Positions 29,496 to 56,365 of a stretch of DNA of 64,000 nt are shown here, one piece after another. This DNA is from Amphiscolops sp. MND2022. Taxonomy: Eukaryota. Made by a program: the position numbers and the translations under genes. The stretch covers positions 53,196,001 through 53,260,000 of the forward strand of contig OZ076415.1 of assembly GCA_964187785.1 (NCBI GenBank), given 5' to 3'. Every line of letters begins with the position of its first letter. The stretch's first letter is position 1. The notes below the pieces were generated by a model. That model was not told the DNA's origin. It saw only the letters and a program-made list of their open reading frames with translations, and ran no database searches.

Positions 29496-29498
29496 TTG

Positions 29499-29516
29499 TG
29501 GTCCGCCGACCCGGAC
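29499..29516 (+). promoter_or_regulatory. BEL-2 primer-binding site
   Basis: TGGTCCGCCGACCCGGAC 3 nt after the LTR end. Confidence 0.8.
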
Positions 29517-29569
29517 ACAGTAAATTACTTCAGTACTCATCTTCAAATCGACAAGTTTCTCACAAGAAA

Positions 29570-32500: not shown

Positions 32501-34787
32501 GTGACATCGCCAAAATCTTCGATCCTCTCGGTTGGATGTCACCAGTTTCACTAGAGCTGAAACACTTGATGCAACAGGTGTGGTAATGCCGAGTTGACTG
32601 GGATAAAAAACTTCCGACCGAATTGACAACAGCCTATCTTGATTGGAGAAGGGAACTCGAAGCCTTGAAGGACATTCGACTGCAAAGATTCTGCCTTTCC
32701 AAGGAACAATCTGACAAAGTTGCACTCCATGTATTCTGCGATGCATCAGAGAAAGGCTATGCTGCGTGCATCTACGTGGTAGCTGAAAATGATTTTGGAG
32801 AAAAGACATCAATGCTCCTAGCTGCCAAGTCAAGAGTGGCTCCCCTCAAAGTGCAATCAATACTTCGATTGGAGCTATGTGGTGCATTATTGGGACAACG
32901 ACTGCTCTCTTCAGTACTCCAAGGACTCTCCAAACTGAAGTTGGCAATCGTTCAGAGATTTGCCTGGACCGATTCGACCATTGTATTGTGCTAGCTGAAG
33001 CAGGAACCCAATCACTGGACAACGTTTGTTGCAAATCGAGTGGAGAAATCCAGCAGGATAGCGAATTAGACTGGCGACATGTCCCAACGCATGAGAATCC
33101 AGCTGATATAGCATCTCGTGGGCTCAATCCGTCTCTTTTGGCAGAAAACAAGCTTTGGTGGTCTGGCCCCAAATGGCTCAAAACTGGACAAATTCCACAG
33201 CCCTATCATTTATTGGAAAAGAAGGAAGAATGCAAGAAGACAGCACCCTCCACACAAGTTCTCCTAGCAGGGACTACTTCTAATGGAATCTCGTCTGAAG
33301 GAGTCATCGACTTATCAAAACAGAATTCATTGACGAAGGCCATTCGAATTGTTGCTATCATTCGGAGGTTCTACAACCGCCAGAGGAAGAATCTCAATCA
33401 ATTACCCATGTACATCACAAGGGAAGAATCATCAGAAGCTCTCAAGATTCTCCTTCGACAAGAGCAACAGAAATTTTTGGAAGAGGAAATTAGAACACTC
33501 GAAAAGGATGTTCAAGTGAAAAAGACTAGCAGACTTGTCAAACTATACCCTTTTCTTCATGAAGGCGTCTTGTGCGTGGGAGGACGATTGGTTCACGCCA
33601 CCCTGGCAGATCAATCAAAATATCCAAGAGTCGTTCCCGCCGAAAGTCATCTGGCAGAATTAATTATCCAAAACTCTCACAGAATCACCCTTTATGGGGG
33701 CACTAACCAAGTCATCACCCACATTAGACAGCATTTTTGGATCCCTGCATCCAGAAATCTCGTCCGGAAGACAATCATGAATTGTACTACATGTTCACGA
33801 TTTACATTGAAACCTTGTTATCCTCTTATAGGGGATTTCCCTAAGCAACGAGTGGACATTCCCAATCGGGCGTTTCAAGATGTAAGCTTGGATTTTGCTG
33901 GACCTTTGTTGTGCAAGGGTCCTAATCGCACTTCAACCAAAGCCTATTTGGTCATTTTTATATGCTTTGCAAGCCGTGCTGTACATCTAGCTGCTGTATC
34001 CGATTTAACAGCACAAGCATGCATCGCTGCCTTGAGACGCTTTGTGTCCCGACGAAGCTGTCCTGACACAATATACTCTGACAATGGGAGTAACTTCGTT
34101 GGAGCTCAAGCTGAGATCAAAACTTTGCAACATTTGCTCCAAAGCGAACATGAGAATTCTCTACAAGCAACAGCCGCCGGGTTGCAGCTAAAGTGGTCTT
34201 TCATTCCCCTTCGAGCGCCACAATTTGGAGGACTTTGGGAGGCAGCAGTGAAGAGTGCAAAGAAACATCTGCGTCGAACAATGGGTAATAATGTGCTAAA
34301 CTTCGAAGAACTTTCCACACTAATCTGCCAAATCGAAAATGTACTCAATTCCAGACCTATTGGAACAATCTCAGAAGATCCAAAGGACGAAACTCCGATA
34401 ACGCCTGCAGATTTGTGTAGTGGTGGAAAATTGCATCTAATCCCTTCACAAAGTTGCAGCACGCCATCAAAAATAGAAGATTGCTCTCCCATGAAACGTT
34501 GGGCATTGACACAAATTTTAATTCAATGGTTCTGGACACCGTGGTCTAAGGAATATGTGTCATCTCTCCAAGAACGAGGAAAATGGACATCGGAGAAGGA
34601 AAATCTTAAACTCTGGGATATTGTATATATTACAGATGACAATACACCGCCCTTGCAATGGCCCATAGGATGAGTAATACATGTTTACAGTGGACCTGAC
34701 AGATTCGTCCGTGTTATGAAGATCAAAACAGCAACTGGAATTTACAATCGTGCAGTCCACAAATTACGAAGGATGCCTTTAGCTTGA
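29570..34787 (+). pseudogene. BEL-2 gag-pol (DUF1759 gag, Cys/His fingers, aspartic protease, RT, RNase H, integrase)
   Basis: LKLPKLQLPSFSG; CFNCLQSGHSASKC; LRALLDSGSQASF; DFYEDDIL; FCDASEKGYAAC; RLELCGALL; LCVGGRL; GGLWEAAVKSAK. About 6 in-frame stops and 2 frameshifts. Confidence 0.95.
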
Positions 34788-38518: not shown

Positions 38519-41500
38519 ATGGAGGAAATTTACGGTTCAACTGCTAAAAAGGTTTGCATTTTGTCATTTTTTTCCTCTCAGATGACATAGATCATTATAT
38601 TCTACGAGTTCATCGAATACGAATGTATCGAATAAATTGTCCTTTTTCAAAATCATTCTTTTCAGCTATCAATCACAGATGACACTTTGAAGCAAATGAA
38701 GCCTAAAGATTTCCTAAATTTCTGGAAGTTGCAAGAAAAATACATAGCCAAATTGGAATCTGATCTTAGTAAGTTTTTACTTATTTCATGCCTGACTATT
38801 TTTGAATAAATGTCCTAAAAGACTCGATCATTGCTAGCTATTGCAATACATTACTTCAACAAGATGTTTTTACAATCATTCATTTGGAAAAATATTTTTT
38901 CGATTTCAGATGACATAAAGCGTCGTCAATAATCCGGTGGTGGGGGGGGGATTGGGAGTGTTAATAGGCGATACACTCGGGTCTACCAACGAGTAGGAAC
39001 ATTAAGAAATTGTATTCATCTATTCAGGTTTTTCTCACATTTTTGAAAATTATTGGAATGAGAATCGTATGTGTCCAAGCGTAAGCTGAAGTAGATTTGC
39101 CTGATCCATTTCATCAAATATATTCATCAATAACTTTGTGTTGCTGCTGTTAGTAACTTCGAAATCTTCATTTTGGAAGAGTACACGACATAAGTGACCA
39201 GTGTACTCTTATCTTTGAGTGCAACAGGTTCAGTTCACAATTTTCAATTCTTGTTTCAGGAGAGTCTGGAGGTACAAAAGCACAACTGTTGGAGAAATTG
39301 AAAACAGTGTCCGAATTACAGGTACTAGAATTTTTCAGTATTGTAGAATTAGCGCAGCTTTTTCTATACTCGTTATACGGCAATGTGTAACATTGATACA
39401 AATAGAGGGTCATCGAGGACTCTTTGAGCTGAGGACATCCTCTAGCTGCTAAGACCTTATATAATGCCGTATAGCATGTTTGAACGGAATATAGACACCA
39501 TGAAAAAACGATTCCATGAAGAACATTTTTTCATCGCCCATTCTTATAATTTCCGGTTTCATGTGGAAATTCAGAATCACCTGTTAAATGTATTCCACAG
39601 AAACGCCTCTGAAAATAATCATTAATCACTAGTCGGAAATTGGTGAATAATACTTCCCAATAACAATCGAAAATTGGGTTATCATTCCTTACGAGGTAAG
39701 GCCTCCGTTGTTTCCATCGGTTGGTTACCCTCTTGGTTAACTCTTGTGTTCTTATTAACCGACAGCTGATCCATATATATGCCGTCCGACAAAAAATTCA
39801 TGTAGCACATTCCGAAATTATCTTCAATCGGAAGTATCGATAGGCTCAAAATGCATATTTTTGATGACATCAGTTCTTGAAGCTATTGAAAGTGTATAAT
39901 TAAATAGTGATTATCCATAGTTCTCTCTTCAAGGTTTGCTTTGATGATTTTTCATAGGCTATTGTTATACAGTCAACGTCTGCAGCGATTATCATTGAGA
40001 AATAACCGCATACGACTTACGCTTAGCTGTTTTTACACTTGCGATAAGCAAGTGTTATGGGAACGTGCGAATTTTTTTTCCGGGTGACAACTCTCTCATT
40101 TCAGACCGCAAGTCGCATAATTCAGACTTTTTTGGTCTAGTGGTAAGATGCTTGCTTTTCAACCCAGAGGGCCTGGGTTCGAACCCGTGCCTATGCACTA
40201 TTTTTTTTACAAGCTGTGCTGCTTCCAATACTTGCAATTGTTTTGAAACACTTGCTTTTCAACCCAGAGGGTCTGGGTTCGAACCCGTGCCTATGCACTA
40301 ATTTTTTTACAAGCTGTGCTTCTTCCAATACTTGCAATTGTTTTGAAACACATTTTTTAAATGATCAAGTTGAGTCCATGCATTCATGTAACATGTAATG
40401 ATGTACCTAGCAAGGTTTTATTTTCGAGTGTATGAGGTTTACCTGAAAAACGTTCCGGCAAATCTTGGTACAAATCAGCCATAATAAAAAGGTTTGTTAG
40501 GCTGAAGATTGCAGCAGTTGATGTCGACGACGAAATACAAAATTTCAAGAGTTGAGACATGGCGTACCAAGACTGTCGAGTCCGAGATTTTAGCAAGTTG
40601 CATGTAGAAGGGGTGCGAAACTAGCGAGTCCTTCCCGGGCAGGTCGTTCCGGGCCACCCAAGGTTAAACACATGTAACAAAATATGAAACTGAGTTCACC
40701 GAATTAAAAATTTTTTTAGTATAATTATGGTTCATTTTGTTTTTCGTATTTTCACAATGTGTTTTGGCGGACGTTTTATGTTACATCAGTTTATGGATGT
40801 TTTCCTATTGCGGAATCATTTGATCCCTAAGATGTCATTTTTTTGGTCCTCAACTGAGCAGAGGTTGCTGGCCTTTTTTTCGGTAATTTAGCTTTTCATA
40901 TAAAGACTGAGGAAACTTTTCAGGTTGTTTCAACATTTTTTTCGAACTCAGTTGATCCAGTTTTTAATGAAACATTATTCTACCCAAAAATGCCAAATTT
41001 AAGTTGCATGTAGAAGGGGTGCGAAACTAGCGAGTCTTTCCCGGGCACGTCGTTCCGGGCCACCCAAGGTTAAACACATGTAACAAAATATGAAACTGAG
41101 TTCATCGAATTTAAAATTTTTTTAGTATAAATATGGTTCACTTGTTTTTCGTATTTTCACAATGTGTTTTGGCGGACATTTTATGTTACATCAGTTTATG
41201 GATGTTTTCCTATTGGGAAATGATTTGATCCCTAAGATGTCATTTTTGGTCCTCAACTGAGCACATGTTGCTCGCCTTTTTTCGGTAATTCAGCTTTTCA
41301 TATTAAGACTGAGGAAACTTTTCAGGTTGTTTCAACATTTTTTTCGAACTCAGTTGATCCATTTTTTAATGAAACATCATTCTATCCAAAAATGCCAAAT
41401 TTGAAGCGATCGTCCCAATTTTTAACGGACGCCATTCGTGCTTGAATTCACTCAATACGATCTCGAACAGTATCTCTCGATGTTGCTCAGAAGAAAACTT

Positions 41501-44500
41501 TGTTAAACCTAAAATCTGAGACCGCAAACCGGGTTCGACCTTGCCCTGATCCAGTTTTTCTGGATTGTCGAACCTGTGTATGGGAAAACCCTGTCCTAGT
41601 GGTTAACCTATGCCCAAATTTTTTCCAACCCCTATGCTTTGCCCGTGTGATTTTTCTTCCGTAGATTCGATGTTAGCAACTCTACTAAATTGAGACTTCG
41701 GACGAAAAGTTCGTTGCCTATTCAATCGAACATTTCAGTGATGTTTCAACGAATTCACTCTTCCAAAATAATTTCGAGGAAAGTCTTTCCTTTGCCAACT
41801 GATATTCATCGAGTTGTTCACATTAAACGCTATTAGTGTAGTGCTACATGTGTTGTATATTTTTCTGCGATAATTTTTTCATCAATCATCAACTCCTTTG
41901 GCTTCATCATGAATTATTGTCACTCCCGCCTCGTGTTTTAGTTACTTCTTTTCAACCAGGTCATTTTGAGCGACCTGAAAATGGCAATTATTCACTAAAT
42001 AGAATTGCCAAGCCTCACGAAAGCTGAAGTTTTTTCTGAGAATGAACGTTATCCAATTCGTTTGCTAGGAAATTTTTCATTAGTTTTTTGCGTTTGTTTT
42101 GTGGGGATCTCTTGAGTTTTGCACAGGTTACTGGCCTTTTTTCGGTAATTCAGCTTTTCATATTAAGACTGAGGAAACTTTTCAGGTTGTTTCAACATTT
42201 TTTTCGAACTCAGTTGATCCATTTTTTAATGAAACATCATTCTATCCAAAAATGCCAAATTTGAAGCGATCGTCCCAATTTTTAACGCACGCCATTTGTG
42301 CTTGAATTCACTCAAACCGATCTCGAACAGCATTTCCCGGTTTCAGCGTTTGTTTGTTGTCACTAAGCTATATCGTTCAGCAATAGAAACATGTATGTCT
42401 CCTCAGGTAATTTTGCTGGGTTAAATTAGGTATGCTGATAGGCTGCAGTTATCTACCGTTTTTTGGAATGTTCCCGAGCTTTTTGTAAGCTTCGTAATGC
42501 AAGATCCGACTCACTCGAATGTTCAATTCAATCATCTCATCTTTTTCAGACAAAATGAAAACATCTTCTACCTTGCAACCCATGTCTGATGACCAGAGGT
42601 TTCTGAGCATCAAAATGCAGTCCAATATTATGTCGTCCTATCGTAACAAGAATGAGGCGAAGGAGTTTTTCATCCAGCAGATTCAGTCTTTGGGATTTAC
42701 TGGATTTAAAGTTCAGGTCACAAACTACCGATTCCTCATTCTTCACGTCAATTGCGACAACTCTGAGGTTTTTGTCTTTTAGTGTTAAAAATATGTTCAA
42801 AGATGAAAAGTAAAATTTTTAATGCTGTACGTTACATCGATTCTCCATTTGCGGAGTACGTTTTTTCTGCTTTGATCCTGATTCAGCATCTGCATTTCAC
42901 GCCACATTTGATGCCTCTAGTGTAAAAATCTTTTGTTCTTTGAAGTCTAATCTACTTTTTTAACAGACTGCATCGGCCCTCTTCAGAGCTTTGAAGTTGA
43001 AGAATTTCATCCACAGTCAAAAAATTGTTCTTACACCGGCGAATTTGCAACTCCGGAACCCCATCTTTCGAGACGGTATCCAAAGAAAACACAACGCCTA
43101 TCGCGATAGAAGTGACAGGCTACATGCAAGCAATGTATACAGCGCACAGGAAGCGAAGAAAAAGAAATCCGAGAAAGCGGCTTTTCAACAGAATGCTACA
43201 ACTCGTTGCCTGCCGCTAAAAATTCGACAGTCCTTGAAAAAAAAAGCTGATAAGCATCCGTCCGAGAGGGAGTGAATGTTTCAAGGTTTTGATTTTGTTA
43301 TTTTAAGATTGATTTTGCACTTTTAGTTCGTTCAGTCATGGTTTTTTCTGCTTGGCACAAAGATTTTACTTTGTTTTCGGAGTTTCCAGAATCTTCTGAG
43401 AATTTTTGACATTGATTTTATTTTCCATTTGAAGTTTTATTTATTGTTTTTAGTTTCTTAGGTTATGTTTTTTTTGGCAAACCGTTTTTATTCGAGTGAA
43501 TTCACCTGTACTCCGATCCTGTTTTCTCCAGAAAGGTGCTCATGAGTTCAATATTCGTCTGTGTCGAAGTATTAATTTTAAATTCTGGCGTTTTTTCTGG
43601 TGCTTCTGCATCTACAGGTTTGAGAATATTTGTAACTAAATTTGGTAATTTTTTGAATCATAGTGACTACGAACGAGCGAGCTACGATTGGTTGCATTGG
43701 TTGATGGAAGTCTTAGTTATTCTTTATATTTCAAAAAATGCGCGTGTTATTTGTCCTGTATCCAAGTTTTCTCAATGTTTTGAATGACCTACTTTTTAAC
43801 TTTTCTTTGAAATACCTCAAACTGTGACGAAAAAATGAGTAATATCTTCTTTAACTCTGCTTTTATGAAATTGCTTTTTAGATGCGCATGGCTTCTCCGT
43901 ACAAAAAACTCAACACTGAGGTTCTGTTCCATGATGGCTTTGTTCATCATGTTTCAAGTGTTAGCAAAACAGCCAACGGCCACCTTTTTCGTTTCTGCTT
44001 TTCAACCGCTGACAGGTGTGTCGATGGATCTTGTTTCGACAAAGGACAGCATAACCTTTATAAGAAATTTGCTGATGAGAAGACTTTTGTTACTCTGCAA
44101 TCACGTGTTGGTTTGGACGAGGAAAAGCGGATCGTAAGCCTAACCTCACTGAGCAACAAACCACCTGTTGTGTGTGATAAAGAAGCACCGGATACAATCA
44201 TCTGTCAGAATTATCCACTAAAAACGTTGGTTTTTGTGTCCGACGAGAGCCTCAAATGTAAAATTACAATTGTGGCAAAAATTGTCCAGAAACGTGAAAG
44301 CGACTTTTCCTACTCCTTAAAGAAGTCCTTGGATGTATATGAGCTAACAGATGATACGAGCACGGGCGTAATGAAAATCTGGGAACCACGCTTTGATCTA
44401 CTCGTTGGTGCCATTTACGAAATTCGTGGCACTGTTAAGGCATTCAAAAACGAAGTCTATCTCGAGGTTTTTTTCATATTTTACACTTGGAATGAGGTTT

Positions 44501-47500
44501 GAACTTCAAATAAGTTTGTTACTTTTATTCTCTTCAGGTGGCTCAGTACCCCTCCAACCTGATTATGCTTGAGGATGCGCCCGCGTGCTCAGGCGGAGTC
44601 ACCAACCAACCGGATTTGACATTCGCTTTGAAAAATAAAGCTGTGGCGAGTGTTCAAGTTAGTAATTCCGGCTGGGTTTGATTTTATTACATAATGCCTG
44701 AGTGGTTTTCTTTCTTCAGGTAACCAAAACATTCAAAACTCAGCTTTGCCTGGTGTGTAGCAAAAACTTCACGCCCTTAGCTGAATCTGCCATTAACAAG
44801 AAGTACGTTTCTGTGGAATGCCGTCATTGCCACGCCAGTGTGAAGGTTCTAAGAAAGGAAGTCCGAATTTTGCGGACAACTTTGGTTGTAGACGATCACG
44901 TTCTAGAAGTTGATCTGTCTCTACTTGCGGAATTATCAACAGAGAAGGAAGTGAAAGACTTTTTCCTTACACACAAATTTGACTTCGAAGTTCGAGGGAA
45001 AAACATTCTGTCGTTGCAGCAAAAAGGACTTGAAAGCGACTCAGACGCTAGCAAATCTTCCTCGTCCCGTGTCGGCAGTGTCAGTTACTGACTCACGAGT
45101 TTTCTCAAAATGAATGAAACTAGACAATGATTTACATAACTATGCTCTTCACTTACTCGTTTGGTATGGAGCTATTTATTTTGTGTTGTTAGTAATTACT
45201 TAAATACTTCTGATACCTTGAATGATTTTTGCTAGTTTTTTGAATTGTTTGTTCACATCGTTTTGCTCCCTGGCATCATTTCGATGTGAAACAAGTACAT
45301 GTTCATATTTCTGCCCTTTAGCTTTATGATAAAAACATTCCAGCTGTTTTTAAACGTTTGTCAGCTTTTTAAATGATCTTGATGTTAATTAGCTGGTTAG
45401 TGTTTTTCCATTTCTTTCCAGTTTGTCTGTCGAGTCATGCAGAATAGATTCTGAAAGAACATTTTTTGATTCTGCTGAGTTTCATAACCGTTTTTCGGTA
45501 ATGCTGCATAACTTGCTTCGAGTTTTTGTTCTTGTGCGTTCACATGCTATTCCGAAGGCTGTTACCTACTGGCTCCTTTATAAGTATTACCAAGTCAAAC
45601 TTCTCAATGTTGCCATTTCTATCAGAGGAATGTTTCCAACATGTTACTTGAATGCAATTGCAAAAATAAGTCAATGTTTTTTCAGAAGTGAAAGATGTTT
45701 GGTAATCAAAGATGGTTTCAACTAATACCTCGAAACAACTGCAATTCAGAGGATTGACCAACGTGGACAATATTTGCTACTTGAATTCAATTTTGCAGTC
45801 GCTGTTTGCTTCAAAAGTTTTCCGAGAATATTTATTGGGTTTTACAAACCGTGGCTCTGTTCATTCATGCTTGAGGCGAATTTTCCAAACATACACGAGC
45901 TGCCGGTCCTGTTTGCGAATTGAGAGATTTGAAAATAAAGCTACTGAATCTTTTGAACAAGCTCTCTGATGCCACCGTTTTTCATGTGGGCGCTCAACAA
46001 GATGCACACGAAGTCTTGACGTCCTTGTTGCATTGTTTGGAGCACGAAGCTTCTCCGAATGACATTTGGCCCTTCAAGCTCAAACTGATACGATTTTTCC
46101 GATGTATGGTTTGCCTTCGACAATGGCAGAAAACTGACACTTCAAATTGTTACAATATTGTAGTCCCCAAAAACGGCTCTCATATCGAAGATGTTCTAAC
46201 TGCCTCCTTCGCAGCAGAAACAATTGACGTGAAATGCCATGAAACATCAGCATGTTCCGGTACGAAGGCTGTTGTTACCAGCGAATTATTTCCAAATGCT
46301 CTCTTTTTAAATCTGAAACGTTATCGTCATACTGCTGGAGGTCGTCAGTATTTGAAAGTTTCAATTACAACAGCATTGTCTTTGACGTTCCACAATCGTT
46401 ATAGTTGGAGAGCAGCCATTGTACATTCAGGATCTTTCGATTTCGGTCATTATCATGCAGTTGTGACCGATGATGTCAGTTGTTTTTACCTTAGCGACAC
46501 AGATATTCGGCAGTCGTCTGTCAGCGAAAGTAATTTAGCTTACATTCTTTTTTATGAGAAATTTTCTGATGATTCTATTCATGATCAACTTAGTACCACC
46601 GCGACTAATCCTTCGTATCCACCGCTGTTTTCATCTTCCAAAAAAGCTTCATCAATTGCAGCTAAAGAATTTCCGACGTCTATAACCAGTTCAAAACCAT
46701 CTACTGAAACTCCAACCACCGAATTCCAAGTTAAAGGGTTGACGAATACAAATAACATTTGCTATTTGAACTCGATTTTACAATGTCTTTTTGCTTCGAA
46801 TCTGTTTCGAAGTTACATTTCGAAGTTTACTAGTTCTGGTGAGACGCATTTATGTTTACGTCAGATTTTTGAGGCCTATGTACACTGCCAGGAGCGCATA
46901 TGCCAAGTGGGACAATTGAAAATCAATCTCTTGGGACTTCTTAACAAGAAGTCAAACAACGTTTTTCATTTGGGTGATCACCAAGATGCACATGAAGTGC
47001 TGACATTGTTCTTGCATTGTTTGGAGCAAGAAGTTTCGTCAGATGACCTCTGGCCCTTCAGTCTGAAAGTGGTAAGGTCTTTCCGATGTACCATTTGTCA
47101 TCGCCAATGGCACCAAACAGAAACCTCAAATTGTTACGATGTAGAAGTTCCCAAAAGAGCATCCCACATAAAAAAAGTTTGGATGCGTCTTTTGGTGCAG
47201 AAACCATTGAAGTGGATTGTCACGGGAGAACATGTTCCGGAAAGAAGGCTGTTGTCACAGTCGATTTATATCCGAATTCGCTGTTGTTTTTGAATTTGAA
47301 ACGTTACCGACACACGGCTACCAGTCGTCAGTATTTGAAAGTTCACATTACACCTGCCTCGTCTTTGAATTTTAACACTCGGTATACTTTACGGGCAGCA
47401 ATAATACATTCAGGGTCGTTCGACTTCGGTCATTATCATACAATTCTGGTTGACGGTGTCAGTCTGCAACGTGTGAGTGACACAGATATCAGTGTAACGA

Positions 47501-50500
47501 CAGCCGATGAACTGAAACTAAGCTATATATTTTTGTATGAATCAGACGTTTCATCTACAGTGAATGATATCAATTGTCTAAGCTCCTCGCTGACATCAGA
47601 AAAATGTCAAACCGTCTCGCCTGTGTCCACACAACTACCAGTACAAACAAAAAAGAAAACTACCTTTTCATCCTTTGACTTCGCTGCTAAAATTTTCAAG
47701 ACAAGTATTGAAGAAACTCCTACTAAAAAAATCAGGACCGAAAGCACCCTTAGAAATGAAAAACAATCGACACCTCAAAGCATTCGTGCTAATTCTGACT
47801 TGAACCTGCAATCAGAGAATACTCATTTTTCTCTTACTTCGATTTCACCACAGTTTTCGAAAAGAAATCAACAACAGCGTAACTTTCGACAGAATGTTAT
47901 GAAAAATCTCAGCAATAGATTGCTTAAGAGAAAAGCTGATCGTATCAACTATCAAGAACGTCCTCAAAAGAAGATTCTAATTCAAAAAAAGTCTGACGCT
48001 ACTAAACTACTCTTGATGGCAAACTCAAATTACAAATTGATGAATAAAGATCGCGCACGGCTAAGAATGAGAAGACCTGAAGTTTTGGAAATAAATCGGG
48101 CGCGAGCTTCCAGGAGATACCATCTGAATGTCAGAAAACACAAGCCCAAGAAACAAAAAGAACAGATGACACTACAGAAGTTGGTCAGAAAGTGGAATCA
48201 TCACATTAATTTCAATTGCTTGCAGTATGTTTGCGTATCTTGCAATCAAAAATTTTATCAGAATCAAGTCAGCAAATTGAATAACGCTCTTATTGATCGC
48301 GCTCGTCTTATAAGAGTGTCTCTTAAAGAGTCCACCTCTGTACAAAACAAACGATGGATTTGTTTAACTTGCTCGAAACACTTACTTAGGAATAAGGTAC
48401 CTCCAATGTCCATTAGTAACGGTTTTTCTTATCCTGAGCAACCTGAAATATTTCGGCGATCGACGAGGATTAGCCGTTTGATGCTTTCGCCGAGAGATGG
48501 CTTCATGAAATTGGTATCAAAACCCAAGGGTGGTCAACGGGGTCGTATAGGTGGAGTTGTGAACGTGCCCAGCCTCGTTGAAGAACTTCATAAAACTCTG
48601 CCTCGTTGCAATAATGACAAACATCTTTTTGCAGTGCAGTTGTTCCGTGATTCGTTTCAATCCAAACCATATATACAACAAATGTCTATAATGGCTGATG
48701 CTTTTGAGATGGCGAAGTTTCTTTGCCAAAAACCTCTTTTCATTGAAAATGGTATTTCTTTCCAACAGTCTCATGTTACTTGCTGTCAAAACACCGTACA
48801 CGCTGACCCAATTGCAGTTGAAACAGACTCAGATTCATCGACAGATACCCAAAGCCTGATTGACCGAGACCTGAATTTACCAACTGTAGTGACCTGCGAA
48901 ACTCCCTGGAGCTCAAATTCTCTAATTCGCGTTTATCCCACTTCTGGTCAACAACCTTTATCTATTTTCACTGACCAGAACTCCGAAGAGTTGACATACC
49001 CCGAACTTTTTTGTGGCGAAGCAAGGGTCGATAATAGTCGCCGCAGAATTCCAGTAAGTTACTCAACAATTGCGCAAGCTGAATTGAAGTCAAGTGACCG
49101 ACGCTGGGCACGACATGAAGAAAATCTATTCTGGAAAGCTACCAAGTTGAAAATTTCTTCTCTTTTTGAGAAGTTGAATGTCGTGACGAGGAAGCGCTAC
49201 AATAACCTAACAGCCAAGGATTTGTCTGAAGATTCTATCAAGTCACTCTTCGCCTCCGACCGTGCTTATGCTTTCACAAGTGCGTTCCGAAATTTCCCCG
49301 AGTTTTTTAGGAATTTGCAAAACGAATTTTTTGCAATGGTCAAAACCCTTGGACCACCGCAGTTTTTTATCACGTTTTCAATGAGTGAATCCCGATGGCC
49401 TGATCTTTTACGTTTGCTATATCAATCCAAATACCCTCAGAAACCGACTCCTCAGGACCATGAACTTCTAACGCTTCCATGGCTTGAAGTTTGCTCTCTG
49501 ATTCAAACAGATCCTGTCAGAATTGTACGTCATTTTGTGCGCAAACTGCGTTTCATTCAGAATCAGGTTTTGAAAAGTAATCTGAGCCCGATTGGAAAAG
49601 TCGTTGATTTCAAGTCTCGAGAGGAAGACCAAAAACGTGGTACTTTGCATGACCATGGAATCTATTACGTTGAAAATGCTCCAGTTTTTGGTGAATCCAC
49701 TGATGCTTCCATTGTCACTTTTATTGATAAAGCTGTTAGTTGTTCTCTATTTTTACCCGACATCGTGGACTGCAACTTAACGGAAGCAGACAAAAGATTG
49801 CCATTGGTTCAAATACATAAACATCATGCAAACTGCAAAAGACCTTTCGTCTGCCGCACAGGTTTCCCCCAACCGCCTCTTCCCAAGACAATGATTCTAC
49901 GTCCTCTTGAAAATGATATTACGTCGTCGGAACACGCGTCAATTTTCGCTCTCCACAAAATTGTTTACACGTTTTTGAATGATCCTACGAAAGTGCCTCC
50001 TGGTGAGGATTGTACTTTCGGTTTCAATGAAATGCTTACCAGGATGAATGTTTCATACACAGATTATCTCAAAGCTGTACGATATCCGTTGAAACGCCCA
50101 GCTGTTTTTCTACGAAGGGAGCCAAATGCCACCAGGGTCAATGCTTACAACCCCCTTTTGCTGTACCTTTGGCGATCGAATATGGATATTCAATATATTC
50201 TCGATGCATATGCGGTTGCGAAATATATCTGCTCCTATATTGCAAAGGCTCAGAAAAATATTTCCAGAACTCTCAAAATGGCGTCGGATCAAGCTAAAAA
50301 CGGGTTGCTCGAGTATTCTGACCAGTTGAAAGAGATCGCTCGAGCATTCATTAAGCATGAAGAAATCGGTGCACAGATGGCTGCTTTGCTGGTACTACAA
50401 TTGCCGATAACGGTGTCCACGAGATCGACTCTCTTCGTTAATACTTCCCCTCCGGAACAAAGAGTGAGAATGCTGAAAAGTCACCAGGAACTGGCTCAGC

Positions 50501-53500
50501 TTCATCCTGACTCAACCGAAGTTTATGCGAACAACTTGTTCCATTATTATACATCACGCCCGCGGACTCTGGAGAACTTATGTTTAGCAGATTTTGCCGC
50601 TAAATTTGTTCGTCGCTCTCATAATGAAACGTTTGAAACATCTGAAAAAGTCATAACATGGCCCAACAAGGCACAATTCTATAAATTAAAACGGAATCGA
50701 ATCCTACGATACGTCAGGTTCGATATTAGAAAAGACCCTGAAAACCATTATCGAGAGTTGTTACTTCTCTTCCATCCATTTCGTGATGAAATGAAGATCT
50801 TGGGTAATTCCGACACGTTTGAACAACAGTACCATCTTTTAAAAGAAAAAATTGAAGCAAAACGAGTTGAGTTCGAACACTGGCGGTCTGTTACACAAAG
50901 AGCTTGTGATGAAATAGAACTTCTCAGCCCCGACGAACTGGAACGAATTAACACCTTCTTGCAAGACGAAGACGAAAACTTGCAAACGGAAGCAGTAACT
51001 CATCTGGACGATACGGAGTCTCCAATTGTCACCATTGGTCAACTACCTGCCCTGATAACAGAAGCTGACTTCGTCTCGCTAATTGCTAGTTTTAACCCCG
51101 AGCAGTCAATGATCTTTCATTCCATTTTACATGAGCTTATTCGGAAATCACAGACTTTAAGGGTTTTCGTTACAGGTGGTGCCGGTACTGGCAAAACAGT
51201 TCTTGTTCAAGCTCTTTACCAAGCTATATCCCGAACGAATGATCAACCCGGACGTTCACTCGACCAACCGCTCGTCCTGTTCCTACACAGGCATCGCTGC
51301 TTCCCTTATTAAAGGAACTACTATTCACAGCGCTTTGGGGTTTACGAGTCGATCCAATAACCCAAACGAGCTTTTGAAAGTATCTCGCTCTCGACTTCAT
51401 ACCTTACAAATTCGATACCAATTTCTTCAAGTTGTGATTATAGATGAAATTTCATTTCTTGGGTCGAACTTTCTTTGCCTCGTTGATTACCGCCTGCGAG
51501 AAATTCGCGCGTCTACTTTACCCTTTGGTGGCTTGACCGTTTTGTTTTTCGGTGATTTATACCAATTACCTCCAGTCAAAGATAGGTTGATTTTCCAACA
51601 ACCTTCTGATGTGATAGAGTTTCCACGCTTCAACGTCCAACTGTGGAAACTTTTCTCAATGTTTGAGCTCAAAATAATCATGCGACAATCGGATGACTTG
51701 CCTTTCGCTGAGCTACTTTCTCGAGTTCGAACAGCTTCACATACAGTTGATGATATTCGTATCCTTGAAAGCAGAATAATTCCAGATGAGATTCATCACC
51801 CACCCCGCTTACGTATCTGTCATACAAATCAACGAGTTGCTGAATACAATGAAAGAGTTTCGTCGGTATCAAGTTGCCAGTCACACACGATACTTGCCAT
51901 TGACAACATTTCAAGGGAATGGTCCACTGCAGAAGTTCAAAACGACGCTTTGTCACGGAAAATATCAAAGATGACTTCTCATCGAACAGGAAATCTCGAA
52001 AGCAGTTTGTGTGTCGCAACCGGTGCTCGTGTTATGCTAACTTGCAATCTTAACTTAGACGATTCACTGTGCAATGGAAAGATTGCTGTTCTCAAAAAAG
52101 TTCAATTAACGAATGGTGAACCAGTCATACTTTGGCTCCATTTCGAAAACAGTGATGTTGGCCAACTTCAACGAATAAAGCATCACCGTTTGTATCGTGA
52201 CGGCATTCAATCGAATTGGGTCCCCATTTTCAAATTATTTCAAAGCTTCGATGTAACTCATGGAACAACATCAACTAGAGTTACCAGAATTCAGTTTCCT
52301 GTCGTTCCTGCATCTGCTATCACCATTCATAAATCGCAAGGTGAGCTATTTTTGTTCTTTTCGGGAACGTATTTTAGCACTTGTTACTAATCGTTTCAAC
52401 CTGAAGTGAAACGCTATCTTCCTTTTATATTAGATTTCACAACTCCCTGGTTTTTTTCTCGGAGAATGAATCTGTTAATACTTCAGGCGATACCTTCAAT
52501 GACTTGGAGTGTGACTTCCGTTCTCGACCAACAATTCATCATTTGGTGTACACGGCACTGAGTAGAGTCCGAAAGTTGGAAAATTTGTTCATTGTCGATG
52601 AATTCCTCTCCAGAAAGATATCTGTTCACCCAGAAGTTAGTTCAATCGTTGTCGACCCTGCTTCGGTTTTTGAACTGCTCTACAGCCAATTGTTACTTTC
52701 CCTGAGTTGTTTGGTTATACTGAATCCTCTTGCTCAATATACACTTTTTTAGTTACAGGTTACGCTGGAGATGGACCGACTTAGACAAGAGGCTGTTTTT
52801 CCAACTTTACAATCTCTGTCCAAGTGTTGCAAAATCCGCCTATTGTTCCAAAATGTACAGAGTCTTCGAAAAAATTTTTGCATTGCTACCAAGCAACAAT
52901 TTTTCGACACTGCAACTTTCAACGTTTTCTGTGAAACTTGGTTGATGTCATCAGACACACTTCCAGCCACATTCAATGATATGTTCATCACACGACTTGA
53001 TTTTCCTACGTGTAATTCGAATCAGAGACACAGAGGAGGATTTGTAATTTTCTCGAAAGTTCGTCTCGACATAACATCCGAAGTCACGAACAATGTGCAA
53101 ATAGCATGTTTCGAATTCATGAATCTTGTTTTCATTTTTGTTCATCGACGACCGTCAGAAACACCAGTATCATTGTTCAAAGAATGTCTTTCTCAGAAGT
53201 TTCGCCAACAGAAGAAACCAACCATTGTTATGGATGATTTCAATGTAAACTTGAAATGCGACAACAGCTCCTTTTTACGCTTTATGGGGTCAGAAGGTTT
53301 CCACTGTCTAATTGATGATACCACCACGAAAGAGCACACACTTCTTGATCACGTATACTGCAATGAATCGAATCTTCTTCATAAGTTGAACTGTTTTGTG
53401 GCCTACAATGTTTATAGTTTCCATGAGCCCATTGTTTTAGAAGTTTGTGATTGATTTTGTTTCAGTAGTTTAGCTTGTTTATCTTATCTTGAATTATATC

Positions 53501-56365
53501 CAGCTGAGATGAGAAATTTCGAAACAAGAAAAATGATAGCGTATAATGTTTTTTCTCGCTTTTCGATTTTCGGAAATCCAGGCACCATATGTGCAAAGAT
53601 TTTCGCGCTTAGTCAAAAGCCTACTTCACGTTGCGAGCCATGATTGCTAACATTTGAGAGAAAGCTTTAGGCCATCTTATCGGGCCGAATGAGTTGCCGG
53701 AGTTGTTTTTAAAGAGATTCCACAGTTTGAAGTTGAAGGCCGGAGGCTCGAGAAGTGAACTCAAGGTTAAAACTCAATAATTTCTATTTTCAATTCCAAA
53801 TTACAACCCAATGATTTTCTCTTTAGAATTAGTACCCACTTTTGTAGTATGATTTATTAGTGCTAATGAATATGATTTATTTTCAGAGGTGTAAAATGCA
53901 TTTTCGTTGGTAAAATCTCAAATGTTTCCTGGCAAATAGCGATGTGACGTGTTGTGCTTTAATAAAAGCGATGTGTTTTGCGCTGTGCTGTTGCCTTCGT
54001 CAAGAATGCAGGCTTTTTTTCAGAGGAAATCGGCCACTCAAGACATTTTTTGGCTGGTTCCCCCAACAAGCATTTTCATTTCAGGACCTAATTTGTGTCT
54101 TTTTGTGCTGTTTTTAAATTGATCAGTAAGTAAAAAATTGTCTTGCCTTTTAAGCCATGGTCCTTCGTGTGATATTGCTTATGCGGTTTTTTCAAAATTT
54201 GCAACTTCGCAAGTGTTTGCGAAGCACGGCTTCGCCTCTGTGTCAATACGGCCTAAAGCTATATACGGTTGGCCGTCTCCATCCCTGACGATTCATCCTA
54301 CTGATTTGTGCTTTTTGAATTATCAGGATGAAATTGCGAAAGCTAAGAAATCTGAAAACATCAGTTCTTCAACTGTCCCAGTCGACCCTGTGGCCTATTC
54401 ATTGATGACGTCATTGAATGAAGCTCTGGTGGCTAAGAAGCAAGAACAGCGGCAACTAGAAGAGGAAGTTATGAAGTGCTCCTACACAGCTGAGAGGTAG
54501 GTTTCAGATAGCTAACGATTTTAGTTAAAGTTTGAGAAATGAATGATTCTTTGAAAATCTAACATGTGAAGTCACATTCTCTTGCCGTCGAATTTCTAAA
54601 CCAACTTTGAACTTCATTAACTTAAGTGTAAATGAATCCCGTCGAATCATCGATAGTTTTTTTCTGAGTTTTTAAATAGTTTTGTTCCATGACTGTAGTT
54701 GAAGAACCTAATGATGCTTCCTTTTTTATACGACGCACAGGACCTGCTAGAGTTGGAACCAAGCACGTGATTAAATGTTGCCGGGCCGGGCGGGCTTTTT
54801 CGAGCTTAAATTTCTTCGAGTATAACAATTCGGAAAATAAATCGAAGATTTATACATTAAACTGGGCTATATAATTTCCGCAATTGATTCCTTTCATTTG
54901 CTCAAAGTGAACGAAATTTTAGTCAAGCTTGTCTTATTCGCACAGCTCGTAGAGCCCAGATGTCTGCCAAGAACTGTTTGATGTTGAATTTTTGAAGTCT
55001 GTTGTAAAAACTGGGATTTTTTAAATTATTATGATGCTTATACCTGATTATAATTTACAATTTACTTTCGGGTATCAGATTCGCTTCCGGGCAGTTTTGT
55101 CGGGTATTTAAAATAATCAAAAATCGGGTCGTGTCGAGATTTTTGAAACGGGCTTCGGGTAGAAAATCATGACCCGGTTCCTACTCTTCCTCTAGATTCA
55201 TTTTTGCGGTGGTCAATAGATTTTGTGATAACCCTACTTTCAATATATATTATCCACTTAACGATGTTTTCGTATTTATTTGATGGGGCCGTAATTGACA
55301 CTGCAAGAAGGCTCTGTTGTTTACAGCAAAATTCACACATTTTCATTCATACTCTTAACTTTGCCCCTACAGAATGGGCTCAAACATGTTGCTCCATGAT
55401 AGCTTTGGTGGTTTCAGTAAGCACGGGTCCCTTAAGAAATGTTGGTTAAATGTTATCCTAAGGGACCCTTGAAAGTGTTGATTTGCGTTTTAGTCAGGTG
55501 GGTAAACTATTGATAGCGAAATGCCAGAAGCTGAGCGCAGAGAACATCGAGTTGCGTCATGCCATTACGGAGGGTAAAGTTGCTCAGGCAGAGGCAGAAG
55601 CTAGTCTGCAGAAACAGAACCGGGATGAGCTCGTACAACAGTTGCAAGGTCTGTTCTTAATACCATCTATGATCACCCCTCTTTTCGGCCCTACTCAGGC
55701 CATATGTCCCTTTCTTATTTTATTGAACTCTCAATACCGCGAAACTGAACACGTTCATAGTAAACAAGAAACTGATGTTAACGTTATCAATTAAGAAAGG
55801 TGTTTGGCAAAAAGAAAAAGAAGACTTTATTGAATGATAGTGGTTAAGTTTCATCCGCTCATAAACTTCCATTACATAATCAACAGATTTTTTGCCATTT
55901 GCTTTTCACTCTCCATGATATATTTTTAAAAGGTGCAACATTGATATAAAAGTTCAGTGTAATTAAATTTAGCCAATAGTGGAATTGAAATGTCTTTGTG
56001 AAATCTTCACGTCTTCAACTCATCCGAGCAAACCAATGAGTGCAAACACGAATCTTTTGAAAGAACTTTTTGATTTTTTTTTGGGCTCATAAGCTGACCT
56101 AAGAATGAAATTTGTTGTAGACCATTCTGAGCAAACAGTGGAACTGGAAGATGAGTTGAAAGAAGCTCAACTGAGATTGTCAGACATCCAAAACTGCTAC
56201 AAACAACTTTTCAGAGAGGAAATGAGTGCCTCGAATTCGTCTTCAGCTGGCACTTCGTCCAGTAGACACCCGACGTCTCATGATAGCAGAAACAGCAGCA
56301 GTCGAAAAAGAAACTCTCTCGACAAAGAAAAGACTCGCGACAATAGTCATAACAGATCCAAATGA
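38519..56365 (+). CDS. WTAP: WTAP/Fl(2)d m6A-writer subunit homologue, 255 aa; exons 38519-38551, 38666-38768, 39260-39321, 54327-54496, 55494-55648, 56121-56365
   Basis: All five junctions are GT-AG and phase-compatible (768 nt). The protein has TAKK|LSITDDTLKQMKPKDFLNFWKLQEKYIAKLE, PVDPVAYSL and YTAESQVGKLLIAKCQKLSAENIEL...EGKVAQAEAEASLQK, matching WTAP (FTPDSQTGKKLMAKCRMLIQENQEL...QGRIAQLEAELALQK). Confidence 0.9.
40126..40197 (+). pseudogene. tRNA-derived (Glu-like) sequence or SINE head
   Basis: A box TGGTCTAGTGG, TTC anticodon-like loop, B box GGTTCGAACCC; no acceptor-stem pairing. Confidence 0.55.
40151..40351 (+). repeat. Near-identical 100-bp-period tandem duplication
   Basis: CTTGCTTTTCAACCCAGAGG...TTTTGAAACA at 40151 and 40251. 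Confidence 0.9.
40595..41455 (+). repeat. 406-bp tandem repeat x2, with a further partial copy at 42130-42315
   Basis: AAGTTGCATGTAGAAGGGG at 40595 and 41001; 41270-41455 is near-identical to 42130-42315. Confidence 0.9.
42550..43275 (+). CDS. Probable spliced accessory ORF(s) upstream of the RPA-like gene; function unknown
   Basis: ORFs 42519-42782 and 42991-43275 have pyrimidine-CAG acceptors at 42549 and about 42988; basic C-terminus. Confidence 0.35.
43882..45091 (+). CDS. RPA70-like tandem OB-fold protein with C4 zinc ribbon; exons 43882-44466 (or 44496), 44538-44657, 44720-45091
   Basis: OB-fold-like ITIVAKIV...YELTDDTS...MKIWE...VGAIYEI...VKAFKNEVYL; third repeat has CLVC...CRHC; two short phase-0 GT-AG introns. 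Confidence 0.65.
45712..53454 (+). mobile_element. Helentron polyprotein: USP1-USP2-ZnF-HUH Rep-PIF1 helicase-AP endonuclease
   Basis: Cys boxes GLTNxxNICYLNSILQ (Cys 45775, 46760); QDAHE; His boxes AAIxHSGSFDFGHY (46448, 47431); LGPPQFFITFS; QKRGTLHDH (HUH); YICSYIAK; GGAGTGKT; IIDEIS; FGDLYQLPPV; TIHKSQG; YTALSRV; EN motifs NVQSL, ETWL, DDFN, LLDHVY. Introns 52341-52486 and 52636-52758; frameshifts near 45915, 47170, 51280. Confidence 0.92.

What the first reader, a model, noticed from the sequence alone, without database searches (positions are those of the whole stretch)
45712..47560. Two tandem USP-family deubiquitinase domains fused to a Helentron Rep-helicase
Seen: two colinear paralogous domains, each with Cys box, QDAHE, CxxC zinc motif, LNLKRY, His box GHY and a downstream SDTD Asp, at the N-terminus of the RepHel frame. 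Established: these are peptidase C19/USP motifs; proteases reported on Helitrons are mostly OTU-type. Inference: a transposon-encoded tandem USP could remove ubiquitin from chromatin, PCNA or RepHel itself, or process the polyprotein.
Basis: partly seen in the sequence, partly recalled or inferred. Interest (0 to 1): 0.8.

Follow-up and report, generated by a model that had tools for sequence, protein, structure and literature searches.

The report
Helentron transposon with tandem USP deubiquitinases
The two ubiquitin-specific-protease domains are real and head the transposase gene of a young, multi-copy Helentron rolling-circle transposon, but this copy is dead, and USP (UCH) domains on such transposons have already been catalogued, so it is a clear example rather than a new kind.

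Summary
Observation confirmed. Window 45712-47560 (+) encodes two paralogous USP/UCH (PF00443) domains, 57% identical, each with the Cys box, QDAHE, zinc Cys pairs, GHY His box and catalytic Asp.

They sit at the extreme N-terminus of the transposase gene of a ~14.2 kb Helentron (window ~40033-54243). The order is USP1, USP2, DUF6570, Rep, PIF1 helicase, a 146-nt GT-AG intron, then an APE-type endonuclease.

This copy is dead: a 2-bp deletion in USP1, a -1 shift at an A7 run in USP2, a 5-bp deletion in the helicase, and a stop before the endonuclease. Three other full-length copies (98-99% identical) carry different breaks. One has both USPs intact in a single ORF, so the ancestral gene was one uninterrupted fusion.

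The USPs occupy the N-terminal slot that the closest relatives fill with OTU or herpes-tegument-like (VTD) deubiquitinases. dN/dS between USP1 and USP2 is about 0.2-0.27. A distant USP-bearing Helentron from another assembly is the sister lineage.

Novelty is limited. HELIANO (NAR 2024) already lists UCH among domains stably carried by Helentron-type elements. Erven et al. (2022) showed Helentron VTD domains, including a tandem pair, are active deubiquitinases. The in-frame tandem arrangement and the probable acoel host are the new details.

The parts
40033..54243 (+). Whole Helentron copy, about 14.2 kb. It appears to sit between a T and a T; the outermost T at each end may belong to the host.
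   Evidence: The ends are defined by the points where five copies (window, L001, L002, L007, L008) stop being alike.
40035..40055 (+). 5' terminal palindrome. Its first 10 nt (40035-40044) are the exact reverse complement of 54207-54216 near the 3' end.
   Evidence: Read directly from the sequence; identical in the five copies.
43882..44502 (+). 206-aa ORF upstream of the transposase gene, kept in other copies. It is a possible RPA/SSB-like OB-fold protein.
   Evidence: Weak Pfam OB-fold hit, E 0.06. ESM Atlas look-alikes are replication factor A and Ssb-like OB clusters, which is a lead only. The ORF is present in L002 and L007.
45712..46560 (+). USP1. It begins 13 codons after the ATG that follows an in-frame stop. 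In this copy it is broken by a private 2-bp deletion at about 45905/45906, and it also has a private in-frame 3-bp deletion near 46303.
   Evidence: Pfam UCH. The intact version in L002 and P0121 matches UCH at E 1.3e-34 over profile positions 8-254 of 254. Indel table. AlphaFold2 model pLDDT 91.3; Foldseek matches to solved USPs at TM 0.8.
46561..46714 (+). Ser/Thr/Pro-rich linker between the two USP domains.
   Evidence: Translation.
46715..47560 (+). USP2. In this copy it is broken by a -1 frameshift at the A7 run 47170-47176. Its C-half is in frame with RepHel.
   Evidence: The run is A7 in the window and L002, A8 (in frame) in L007, and A9 in L008. P0271 from L007 has both USPs intact in one 640-aa ORF.
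48388..48729 (+). DUF6570 domain, described in the literature as a marker of Helentron-type (HLE2) transposases.
   Evidence: Pfam PF20209, E 2.7e-07. Marker status is from PMC11417382.
49195..49662 (+). Rep (HUH endonuclease) core, with an H-x-H motif (LHDHG) and a two-tyrosine motif (YICSYIAK).
   Evidence: Pfam Helitron_like_N, E 3e-17. Motifs read in the ORF translation.
51091..52340 (+). PIF1-type helicase, first exon part, with Walker A GAGTGKT. In this copy it is broken by a private 5-bp deletion at about 51277.
   Evidence: Pfam PIF1 on both ORF pieces. Indel table.
52341..52486 (+). Putative 146-nt GT-AG intron inside the helicase. Splicing joins the HKSQG motif in frame to the YTALSRV motif and the endonuclease.
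   Evidence: Donor CAAG|GTGAGC and acceptor TTCAG|G are read in the sequence. 146 mod 3 = 2, which equals the frame change needed. L007's 13-bp deletion falls inside this interval.
52487..53454 (+). Helicase C-terminal end plus APE-type endonuclease. In this copy it carries a stop codon at 52750-52752.
   Evidence: The 302-aa ORF of L007 gives a weak Pfam Exo_endo_phos hit, E 2.9e-4. It is homologous to the C-terminal endonuclease of related Helentron proteins, E down to 7e-18. The window version has a stop at residue 69.
54205..54243 (+). 3' terminus, holding an 8-bp-stem hairpin (54205-54224) and an overlapping alternative GCGAAGC/GCTTCGC stem, and ending in CTCTGTGT.
   Evidence: DNA fold -12.1 kcal/mol, z -2.0.

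Best explanation
Window ~40033-54243 is one decayed copy of a recently active Helentron (HLE2 rolling-circle transposon). The family has at least 8 copies in this genome. Its ancestral transposase gene encoded one protein of roughly 2,500 aa: USP1, USP2, DUF6570, Rep (HUH), PIF1 helicase and an APE-type endonuclease, with one 146-nt intron. These points are shown. The tandem USP pair fills the N-terminal 'deubiquitinase slot' that the nearest relatives fill with OTU or VTD domains. It most likely acts as an active deubiquitinase module. It would remove ubiquitin, or a ubiquitin-like modifier, from the transposase itself or from host replication or chromatin factors, protecting the transposition machinery from ubiquitin-dependent degradation or restriction. 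This functional step is inferred by analogy, not shown. In this copy the module and the rest of the gene are inactivated by four lesions.
For: - Domains and order: Pfam; the endonuclease by homology; the intron.
- Helentron termini and TT target in five copies.
- Copy number: 7 USP-ORF members and 18 RepHel members in the same assembly. The window's own ORFs match contig-303732 proteins exactly.
- Ancestral continuity: each frame-breaking indel is private to one copy, except at a hypervariable A-run that is in frame in L007. P0271 has both USPs intact in one ORF.
- Catalytic N17, C22, H248 and D264 and the zinc Cys residues align with columns that are invariant or nearly invariant in 70 USP domains, and with USP46 and USP12.
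- The USP fold is predicted with confidence (pLDDT 91.3) and matches USP30, USP35, USP12, USP46 and USP18 at TM about 0.8, E 1e-23.
- Constraint: dN/dS between USP1 and USP2 is 0.20-0.27. Against old decayed copies, the USP region (0.41-0.54) is about as constrained as RepHel (0.37-0.55).
- The old copies L004 and L005 keep the USP1-USP2-RepHel order.
- A Helentron from another assembly (L006; RepHel 36-39% identical, USP 27%) also has a USP upstream of RepHel. It is sister to this family in two trees, with support 100.
- Relatives carry VTD or OTU at the N-terminus, before DUF6570.
- Helentron VTD domains, including a tandem pair, are active deubiquitinases in vitro (PMC9741609).
Against: - No copy seen has a fully intact gene. 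The best, L002, still has the A7 shift and a Cys-to-Arg change in USP2.
- No transcript or activity data exist.
- dS between USP1 and USP2 (1.0-1.5) is near saturation, so that ratio is approximate.
- None of the 120 closest RepHel relatives in the protein database has a UCH domain. The module is therefore dispensable for Helentrons in general.
- HELIANO interprets such domains as captured genes of unknown use.
Confidence: 0.75

Rival explanations
1. The USP pair is a passenger: a host USP gene fragment captured by the Helentron and carried along, with no role in transposition.
For: Helitron-like elements capture host genes, and HELIANO classes UCH among captured domains (PMC11417382). Most close RepHel relatives lack UCH. 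Several copies carry broken USP domains.
Against: The USPs are at the very N-terminus, in frame with RepHel, and no copy has an intervening stop. Both paralogues keep all catalytic residues. dN/dS is 0.2-0.27 between them, and constraint equals that of RepHel. The arrangement is retained in an older subfamily and in a sister lineage at 36-39% RepHel identity. No close host USP donor was found; the best non-self hits are 27-37% identical.
Confidence: 0.17
2. The USP domains are polyprotein-processing proteases that cut the transposase into separate USP, RepHel and endonuclease products.
For: They lie in a large multidomain protein with long linkers. Some viral papain-like deubiquitinases do both jobs (my own background knowledge).
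Against: From established knowledge of the family, USPs recognise a folded ubiquitin and cut after its C-terminal GG. Pfam finds no ubiquitin-like domain in the gene. The only GG motifs in the window's 1408-aa ORF, which spans the USP2 C-half, the linker and Rep, lie inside DUF6570 and in the helicase Walker A, not in linkers.
Confidence: 0.04
3. The break in USP2 is a programmed -1 ribosomal frameshift (or transcriptional slippage) at A_AAA_AAA. It would set the ratio of a USP-only product to the full USP-RepHel protein.
For: The shift sits exactly on a perfect X_XXY_YYZ heptamer, and a -1 slip restores the homology-predicted reading. Four gene products share it: the window's own copy (P0273), L002 (P0121), and P0274 on a third contig.
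Against: The run length differs among 99%-identical copies: A7, A7, A8 and A9. A8 is simply in frame and A9 is out of frame the other way. A second A-run (47648) and a C-run (50151) also vary. The older copy behind P0124 reads straight through this position. This is the pattern of homopolymer mutation or assembly error, not of a conserved recoding signal.
Confidence: 0.04

Closest known systems
UCH-bearing HLE2 elements catalogued by HELIANO (Li et al., NAR 2024, PMC11417382; HLE2 subgroups c and d, mostly lungfish and axolotl)
   Same: A Pfam UCH domain stably associated with Helentron/Helitron2-type (HLE2) elements that also carry DUF6570, and restricted to one part of the HLE2 tree. Here the two USP-bearing lineages also form their own clade.
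   Different: That paper lists only the domain, counts it among the 17 domains it says are encoded in different ORFs from RepHel, and reports no tandem pair. Here the USPs are tandem, at the N-terminus, in frame with RepHel, and the host is probably an acoel.
[quoted passage not shown]
   Same: One or two deubiquitinase domains sit at the N-terminus of a Rep-Hel-EN Helentron protein. The relatives P0002 and P0004 have VTD at residues 40-188 and 2-142, before DUF6570. Both are papain-like thiol proteases.
   Different: A different deubiquitinase family. VTD has an Asp-x-His active site, whereas USP has the Cys box, His box and Asp order. VTD activity has been shown in vitro (K48, K63 and K11 chains, and NEDD8). 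The USP module here is untested.
OTU-domain Helentrons (classical description; relatives P0003 and P0012)
   Same: The same N-terminal position, upstream of DUF6570, Rep, Hel and EN. These are the closest named relatives of the RepHel (32-35% identity).
   Different: OTU (PF02338) versus USP (PF00443). According to PMC9741609, OTU activity in Helitrons has never been assayed.
Cellular compact USPs with solved structures (USP30, USP35, USP12/46, USP18, USP2, USP21)
   Same: The same fold (TM 0.75-0.80), catalytic triad and zinc-ribbon Cys residues.
   Different: Only 19-25% identity. The domain here is short (about 270 aa), has no accessory domains, and its second zinc pair is spaced C-x5-C or C-x4-C instead of CxxC. 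It is not an orthologue of any one of them.

Membership tests
Peptidase C19 / USP (Pfam UCH, PF00443) | Profile match above Pfam's gathering score over the whole domain | tested here: met
   The window pieces score 32.4 and 102 bits against a cut-off of 23.9. Intact USP1 in P0121 scores 120.4 bits, E 1.3e-34, over profile positions 8-254 of 254. The USP2 C-piece alone is sub-threshold at 18 bits.
Peptidase C19 / USP (Pfam UCH, PF00443) | Catalytic Cys in the Cys box, with the oxyanion Asn | tested here: met
   N17 and C22 of USP1 fall in invariant columns of 70 USP domains and align with the USP46 and USP12 Cys box. USP2 has the same motif in the window and in L007. In L002 its Cys is Arg.
Peptidase C19 / USP (Pfam UCH, PF00443) | His box (GHY) and downstream catalytic Asp/Asn | tested here: met
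   G247, H248, Y249 and D264 of USP1 fall in invariant or nearly invariant columns. The same residues are present in USP2.
Peptidase C19 / USP (Pfam UCH, PF00443) | USP fold | tested here: met
   AlphaFold2 model with pLDDT 91.3 and pTM 0.89. The top 50 Foldseek PDB hits are all USP catalytic domains, best E 2.7e-23, TM 0.80.
Peptidase C19 / USP (Pfam UCH, PF00443) | Hydrolysis of ubiquitin or ubiquitin-like conjugates | not testable with these tools
   Needs Ub-PA or Ub-AMC and di-ubiquitin assays.
Helentron (HLE2 with endonuclease) | Rep (HUH) plus PIF1-type helicase in one protein | tested here: met
   Helitron_like_N E 3e-17; PIF1 E 5e-18. H-x-H, two-Tyr and Walker A motifs are read. The 1701-1769-aa uninterrupted version is in L002.
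Helentron (HLE2 with endonuclease) | C-terminal APE-type endonuclease | tested here: met
   Pfam Exo_endo_phos is sub-threshold (21.1 bits against 24.5, E 2.9e-4). phmmer aligns the ORF to the C-terminal endonuclease of many Helentron proteins, E to 7e-18. It is joined to the helicase by a GT-AG intron.
Helentron (HLE2 with endonuclease) | DUF6570 N-terminal to Rep (the HLE2 marker according to PMC11417382) | tested here: met
   PF20209, E 2.7e-07.
Helentron (HLE2 with endonuclease) | Insertion between T and T; 5' end complementary to a 3' subterminal sequence; 3' hairpin | tested here: met
   Five copies share ends that begin with T and finish with T. 40035-44 is the reverse complement of 54207-16. 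A hairpin lies at 54205-24. No empty site was available to prove the exact target.
HELIANO UCH-bearing HLE2 subgroups c/d | RepHel falls inside those subgroups and the UCH is orthologous | not testable with these tools
   The paper's sequences and supplementary tables are not held. Only an indirect sign exists: the two USP-bearing lineages form a clade apart from the OTU/VTD Helentrons.
Programmed -1 frameshift site | Slippery heptamer conserved among copies, with the frameshift needed in all | tested here: not met
   The run is A7, A7, A8 and A9 in four copies.

The most novel reading that the evidence does not exclude
USP would be a third, independently recruited deubiquitinase class (after OTU and VTD) in the same N-terminal slot of Helentron transposases. 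It is duplicated in tandem, as VTD is in zebrafish DrT1. If so, deubiquitination would be a recurrent, selected requirement of Helentron transposition rather than cargo. This young acoel family, with near-intact copies, would give a tractable system to find the ubiquitinated target.
Probability: 0.45. Interest if true: 0.55.

Novelty: new member of a known kind. Interest (0 to 1): 0.4.

Why it matters
Helentrons repeatedly carry deubiquitinases, and nobody knows what they deubiquitinate. A family in which a classical, well-understood USP fold replaces OTU or VTD in the same position strengthens the published idea (PMC9741609) that the activity matters more than the fold. Here the USP is duplicated, under purifying selection, and fused in frame to the transposase. 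The abundant USP probes and inhibitors could therefore be used to test how ubiquitin signalling restricts rolling-circle transposition. As a genome feature it is otherwise an ordinary dead transposon copy.

Tried and rejected
- A word-indexed protein search with the USP2 C-half, restricted to long proteins, found nothing.
- None of the 120 RepHel relatives contains UCH, both by precomputed Pfam and by a local phmmer search with the USP ORF.
- The exhaustive HMMER search gave only four hits at or below E 1e-30. Three are from the same genome, and one is a 1.3-kb Tara Oceans contig fragment with no context.
- The best non-self hits are vertebrate proteins with multiple USP domains and no Helitron domains, so no donor gene could be named.
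- Rfam found nothing in the window.
- HELIANO's supplementary tables are not held, so orthology with its UCH elements could not be tested.
- A programmed frameshift at the A-run was considered and rejected.
- A separate endonuclease ORF was considered and replaced by the intron model.
- The PDB sequence search with the endonuclease ORF found nothing.
Full report
**1. The observation**

ORF listing and three-frame translation of 45400-47700 show two colinear USP-like domains on the + strand. Pfam confirms them:
- UCH (PF00443) on 45712-45966, covering the Cys box, at E 9.5e-08.
- UCH on 45920-47290, covering the USP1 C-part and USP2 N-part as two stretches, at E 5.5e-29.
- UCH, below threshold (E 0.0023), at residues 69-151 of the 1408-aa ORF 47086-51312.

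That last ORF continues without a stop into DUF6570, Helitron_like_N and the start of PIF1. A fourth ORF (51176-52390) carries the rest of PIF1.

In this copy neither USP domain lies in one frame. USP1 shifts frame near 45905, and USP2 shifts at an A7 run at 47170-47176. The helicase shifts near 51277.

**2. The element and its copies**

The closest RepHel protein in the database (P0001, 99% identical) led to locus L001 in ENA assembly ERZ25074608. Proteins found with the USP ORF led to L002, L007 and L008 in the same assembly. The gene products P0273, P0290 and P0282, all from one 303,732-bp contig, are exact translations of the window, so the window is that contig or the same genome.

All copies are alike from window ~40033 to 54243 and unrelated outside that span. 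L001 is an internal-deletion derivative that lacks 40706-48753, including the USPs.

The ends are Helentron-like:
- Each copy begins with T and ends with T, in different flanks, which is consistent with insertion between T and T.
- The first 10 nt after the T's (40035-40044) are the exact reverse complement of 54207-54216.
- A hairpin with an 8-bp stem lies at 54205-54224.

Cluster look-up shows 7 USP-ORF members and 18 RepHel members on at least 10 contigs. The family is young and multi-copy; four aligned copies differ at 120 of about 8,650 columns.

**3. An ancestrally uninterrupted fusion**

The four-copy alignment lists every indel.
- Private to the window: the 2-bp deletion in USP1, an in-frame 3-bp deletion near 46303, and the 5-bp deletion in the helicase.
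- Private to L008: a 1-bp loss at 46640.
- Private to L007: an extra A at 47648 and a lost C at 50151.
- Shared position: the A-run in USP2 is A7 in the window and L002, A8 (in frame) in L007, and A9 in L008.

P0271 from L007 is a 640-aa ORF with both USP domains complete. In L002 the ORF that begins in the USP2 C-half runs 1769 aa through the helicase.

The family's ancestor therefore had one open frame from the ATG at 45712, which is preceded by an in-frame stop three codons upstream, through the helicase. The varying run length argues against a programmed frameshift, although the site is a perfect A_AAA_AAA heptamer.

**4. Endonuclease and intron**

A 302-aa ORF downstream of the helicase is intact in L001, L007 and L008. 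It gives a weak Exo_endo_phos hit (E 2.9e-4). It aligns to the extreme C-terminal endonuclease of many related Helentron proteins, with E down to 7e-18.

This ORF begins with the PIF1 motif YTALSRV. The upstream helicase ORF stops shortly after HKSQG. Between them lie a CAAG|GTGAGC donor at 52340/52341 and a TTCAG|G acceptor at 52486/52487. The 146-nt interval gives exactly the frame change needed. I read this as an intron, so the gene encodes USP1, USP2, DUF6570, Rep, Hel and EN as one protein.

The window copy also has a stop at 52750-52752. In total it carries four disabling lesions.

**5. Are the USP domains likely active?**

USP1 and USP2 are 57% identical. In an alignment with 68 other USP domains, N17, C22, Q29, D98, G247, Y249 and D264 of USP1 fall in invariant columns. 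H248 and the zinc Cys columns are at least 90% conserved. USP46 and USP12 align residue for residue at the Cys box, QDAHE, the His box and the Asp.

The AlphaFold2 model of USP1 is confident (pLDDT 91.3, pTM 0.89). Its best PDB matches are USP30, USP35, USP12, USP46, USP18, USP2 and USP21, at TM 0.75-0.80 and E about 1e-23.

dN/dS between the two paralogues is 0.20-0.27. dS is 1.0-1.5, near saturation, so the ratio is approximate. Against two old decayed copies (L004 and L005, 40-65% aa identity), dN/dS is 0.41-0.54 for the USP region and 0.37-0.55 for RepHel, which is equal constraint. Those old copies keep the order USP1, USP2, RepHel, although each is interrupted by a retroelement insertion.

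**6. Relatives**

None of the 120 closest RepHel proteins carries UCH. These come from corals, sea cucumbers, bivalves, rotifers, insects and fish, at 23-39% identity. Many of them carry OTU (PF02338), Herpes_teg_N/VTD (PF04843) or Ulp1, together with DUF6570 and the endonuclease. In four checked relatives the deubiquitinase is N-terminal to DUF6570: VTD at residues 40-188 and 2-142, and OTU at 129-237 and 439-541. This is the slot the USP pair occupies here.

One USP hit (P0132) also matched RepHel. Its locus L006 comes from a different assembly (ERZ25071366). It is a decayed Helentron with a USP (27% identical) upstream of DUF6570-Rep-Hel (36-39% identical), and a segment of about 2.08 kb holding USP plus DUF6570 is triplicated.

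In RepHel trees the window family and L006 are sisters with support 100. This holds in a FastTree of 83 rows and in an IQ-TREE LG+C20 tree of 34 rows. They form a lineage apart from the OTU/VTD elements. Both branches are long, so this is supportive rather than conclusive.

The best non-self USP hits are vertebrate proteins with several USP domains and no Helitron domains (27-37% identity). No donor gene can be named.

**7. Host**

The window also holds a BEL/Pao retrotransposon, which points to a metazoan host on my own background knowledge of that element group's range. A cyclin-H gene flanking L008 is 55% identical to that of the acoel Convolutriloba macropyga, and the next named hit is 34% identical. 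The host is probably an acoel. This rests on a single gene.

**8. Literature**

HELIANO (PMC11417382) lists UCH among 20 domains 'stably included' in Helitron-like elements. It finds UCH almost exclusively in HLE2 and enriched in subgroups c and d, which come mostly from lungfish and axolotl. It also counts UCH among the 17 domains it says are encoded in ORFs different from RepHel.

Erven et al. (PMC9741609) showed that Helentron VTD domains are active deubiquitinases, including the tandem pair of zebrafish DrT1. They act on K48, K63 and K11 chains and on NEDD8. [quoted passage not shown]

The association of USP with Helentrons is therefore catalogued, and the functional idea is published. What this locus adds is a clear in-frame, N-terminal, tandem USP module under purifying selection, in a young family of a probable acoel.

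**9. Mechanism and verdict**

Shown:
- the domain architecture,
- the fusion at family level,
- conservation of the catalytic residues,
- purifying constraint,
- equivalence of the position to the OTU/VTD slot.

Inferred:
- that the module is an active deubiquitinase,
- that it stabilises the transposase or removes ubiquitin from host replication or chromatin factors.

Polyprotein processing is unlikely. Pfam finds no ubiquitin-like domain, and no linker in the window ORF from USP2 into Rep has a GG motif. Passenger capture is possible but fits the constraint data poorly.

The finding is real and well read by the first stage. However, this copy is a pseudogene and the kind is already known, so interest is moderate.

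Noticed in passing
window 52341-52486: Putative 146-nt GT-AG intron inside the PIF1 helicase. It joins the helicase to the endonuclease in frame, so this Helentron transposase gene is spliced.
   Followed up: partly
window 43882-44502: A 206-aa ORF conserved in other copies, upstream of the transposase, with weak OB-fold signals resembling RPA or Ssb. HELIANO reports RPA and Ssb-like OB domains upstream of RepHel in HLE2.
   Followed up: partly
window 40151-40351 and 40858-42330: The 5' non-coding part of the element holds roughly 100-bp tandem repeats and a larger repeated block. The copy number of the block differs between element copies.
   Followed up: no
window 29498-34673: BEL/Pao-type LTR retrotransposon genes on the + strand, in several frames: DUF1759, an aspartyl protease, Peptidase_A17, and integrase plus DUF5641.
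   Followed up: no
L006:5077-11872: In a Helentron from another assembly (ERZ25071366), a segment of about 2.08 kb holding the USP C-part and DUF6570 is repeated three times head to tail, before the complete RepHel.
   Followed up: partly
L004:8200-15650 and L005:11675-16325: Two old, decayed copies of a related USP-USP-RepHel element are each split between the USP2 linker and DUF6570 by an insertion of 5-7 kb that encodes a reverse transcriptase.
   Followed up: no
proteins P0125, P0126, P0130: Vertebrate proteins with 7-10 tandem UCH domains and no Helitron domains: a low-quality Thomomys bottae model of 3205 aa, a Pempheris klunzingeri protein and a Menidia menidia protein. They are the top non-self hits, partly because scores sum over the repeated domains.
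   Followed up: partly
L008:18003-18881: A single-exon cyclin-H gene flanks another copy of the element. It is 55% identical to that of Convolutriloba macropyga and at most 34% to other named animals, which suggests an acoel host.
   Followed up: partly
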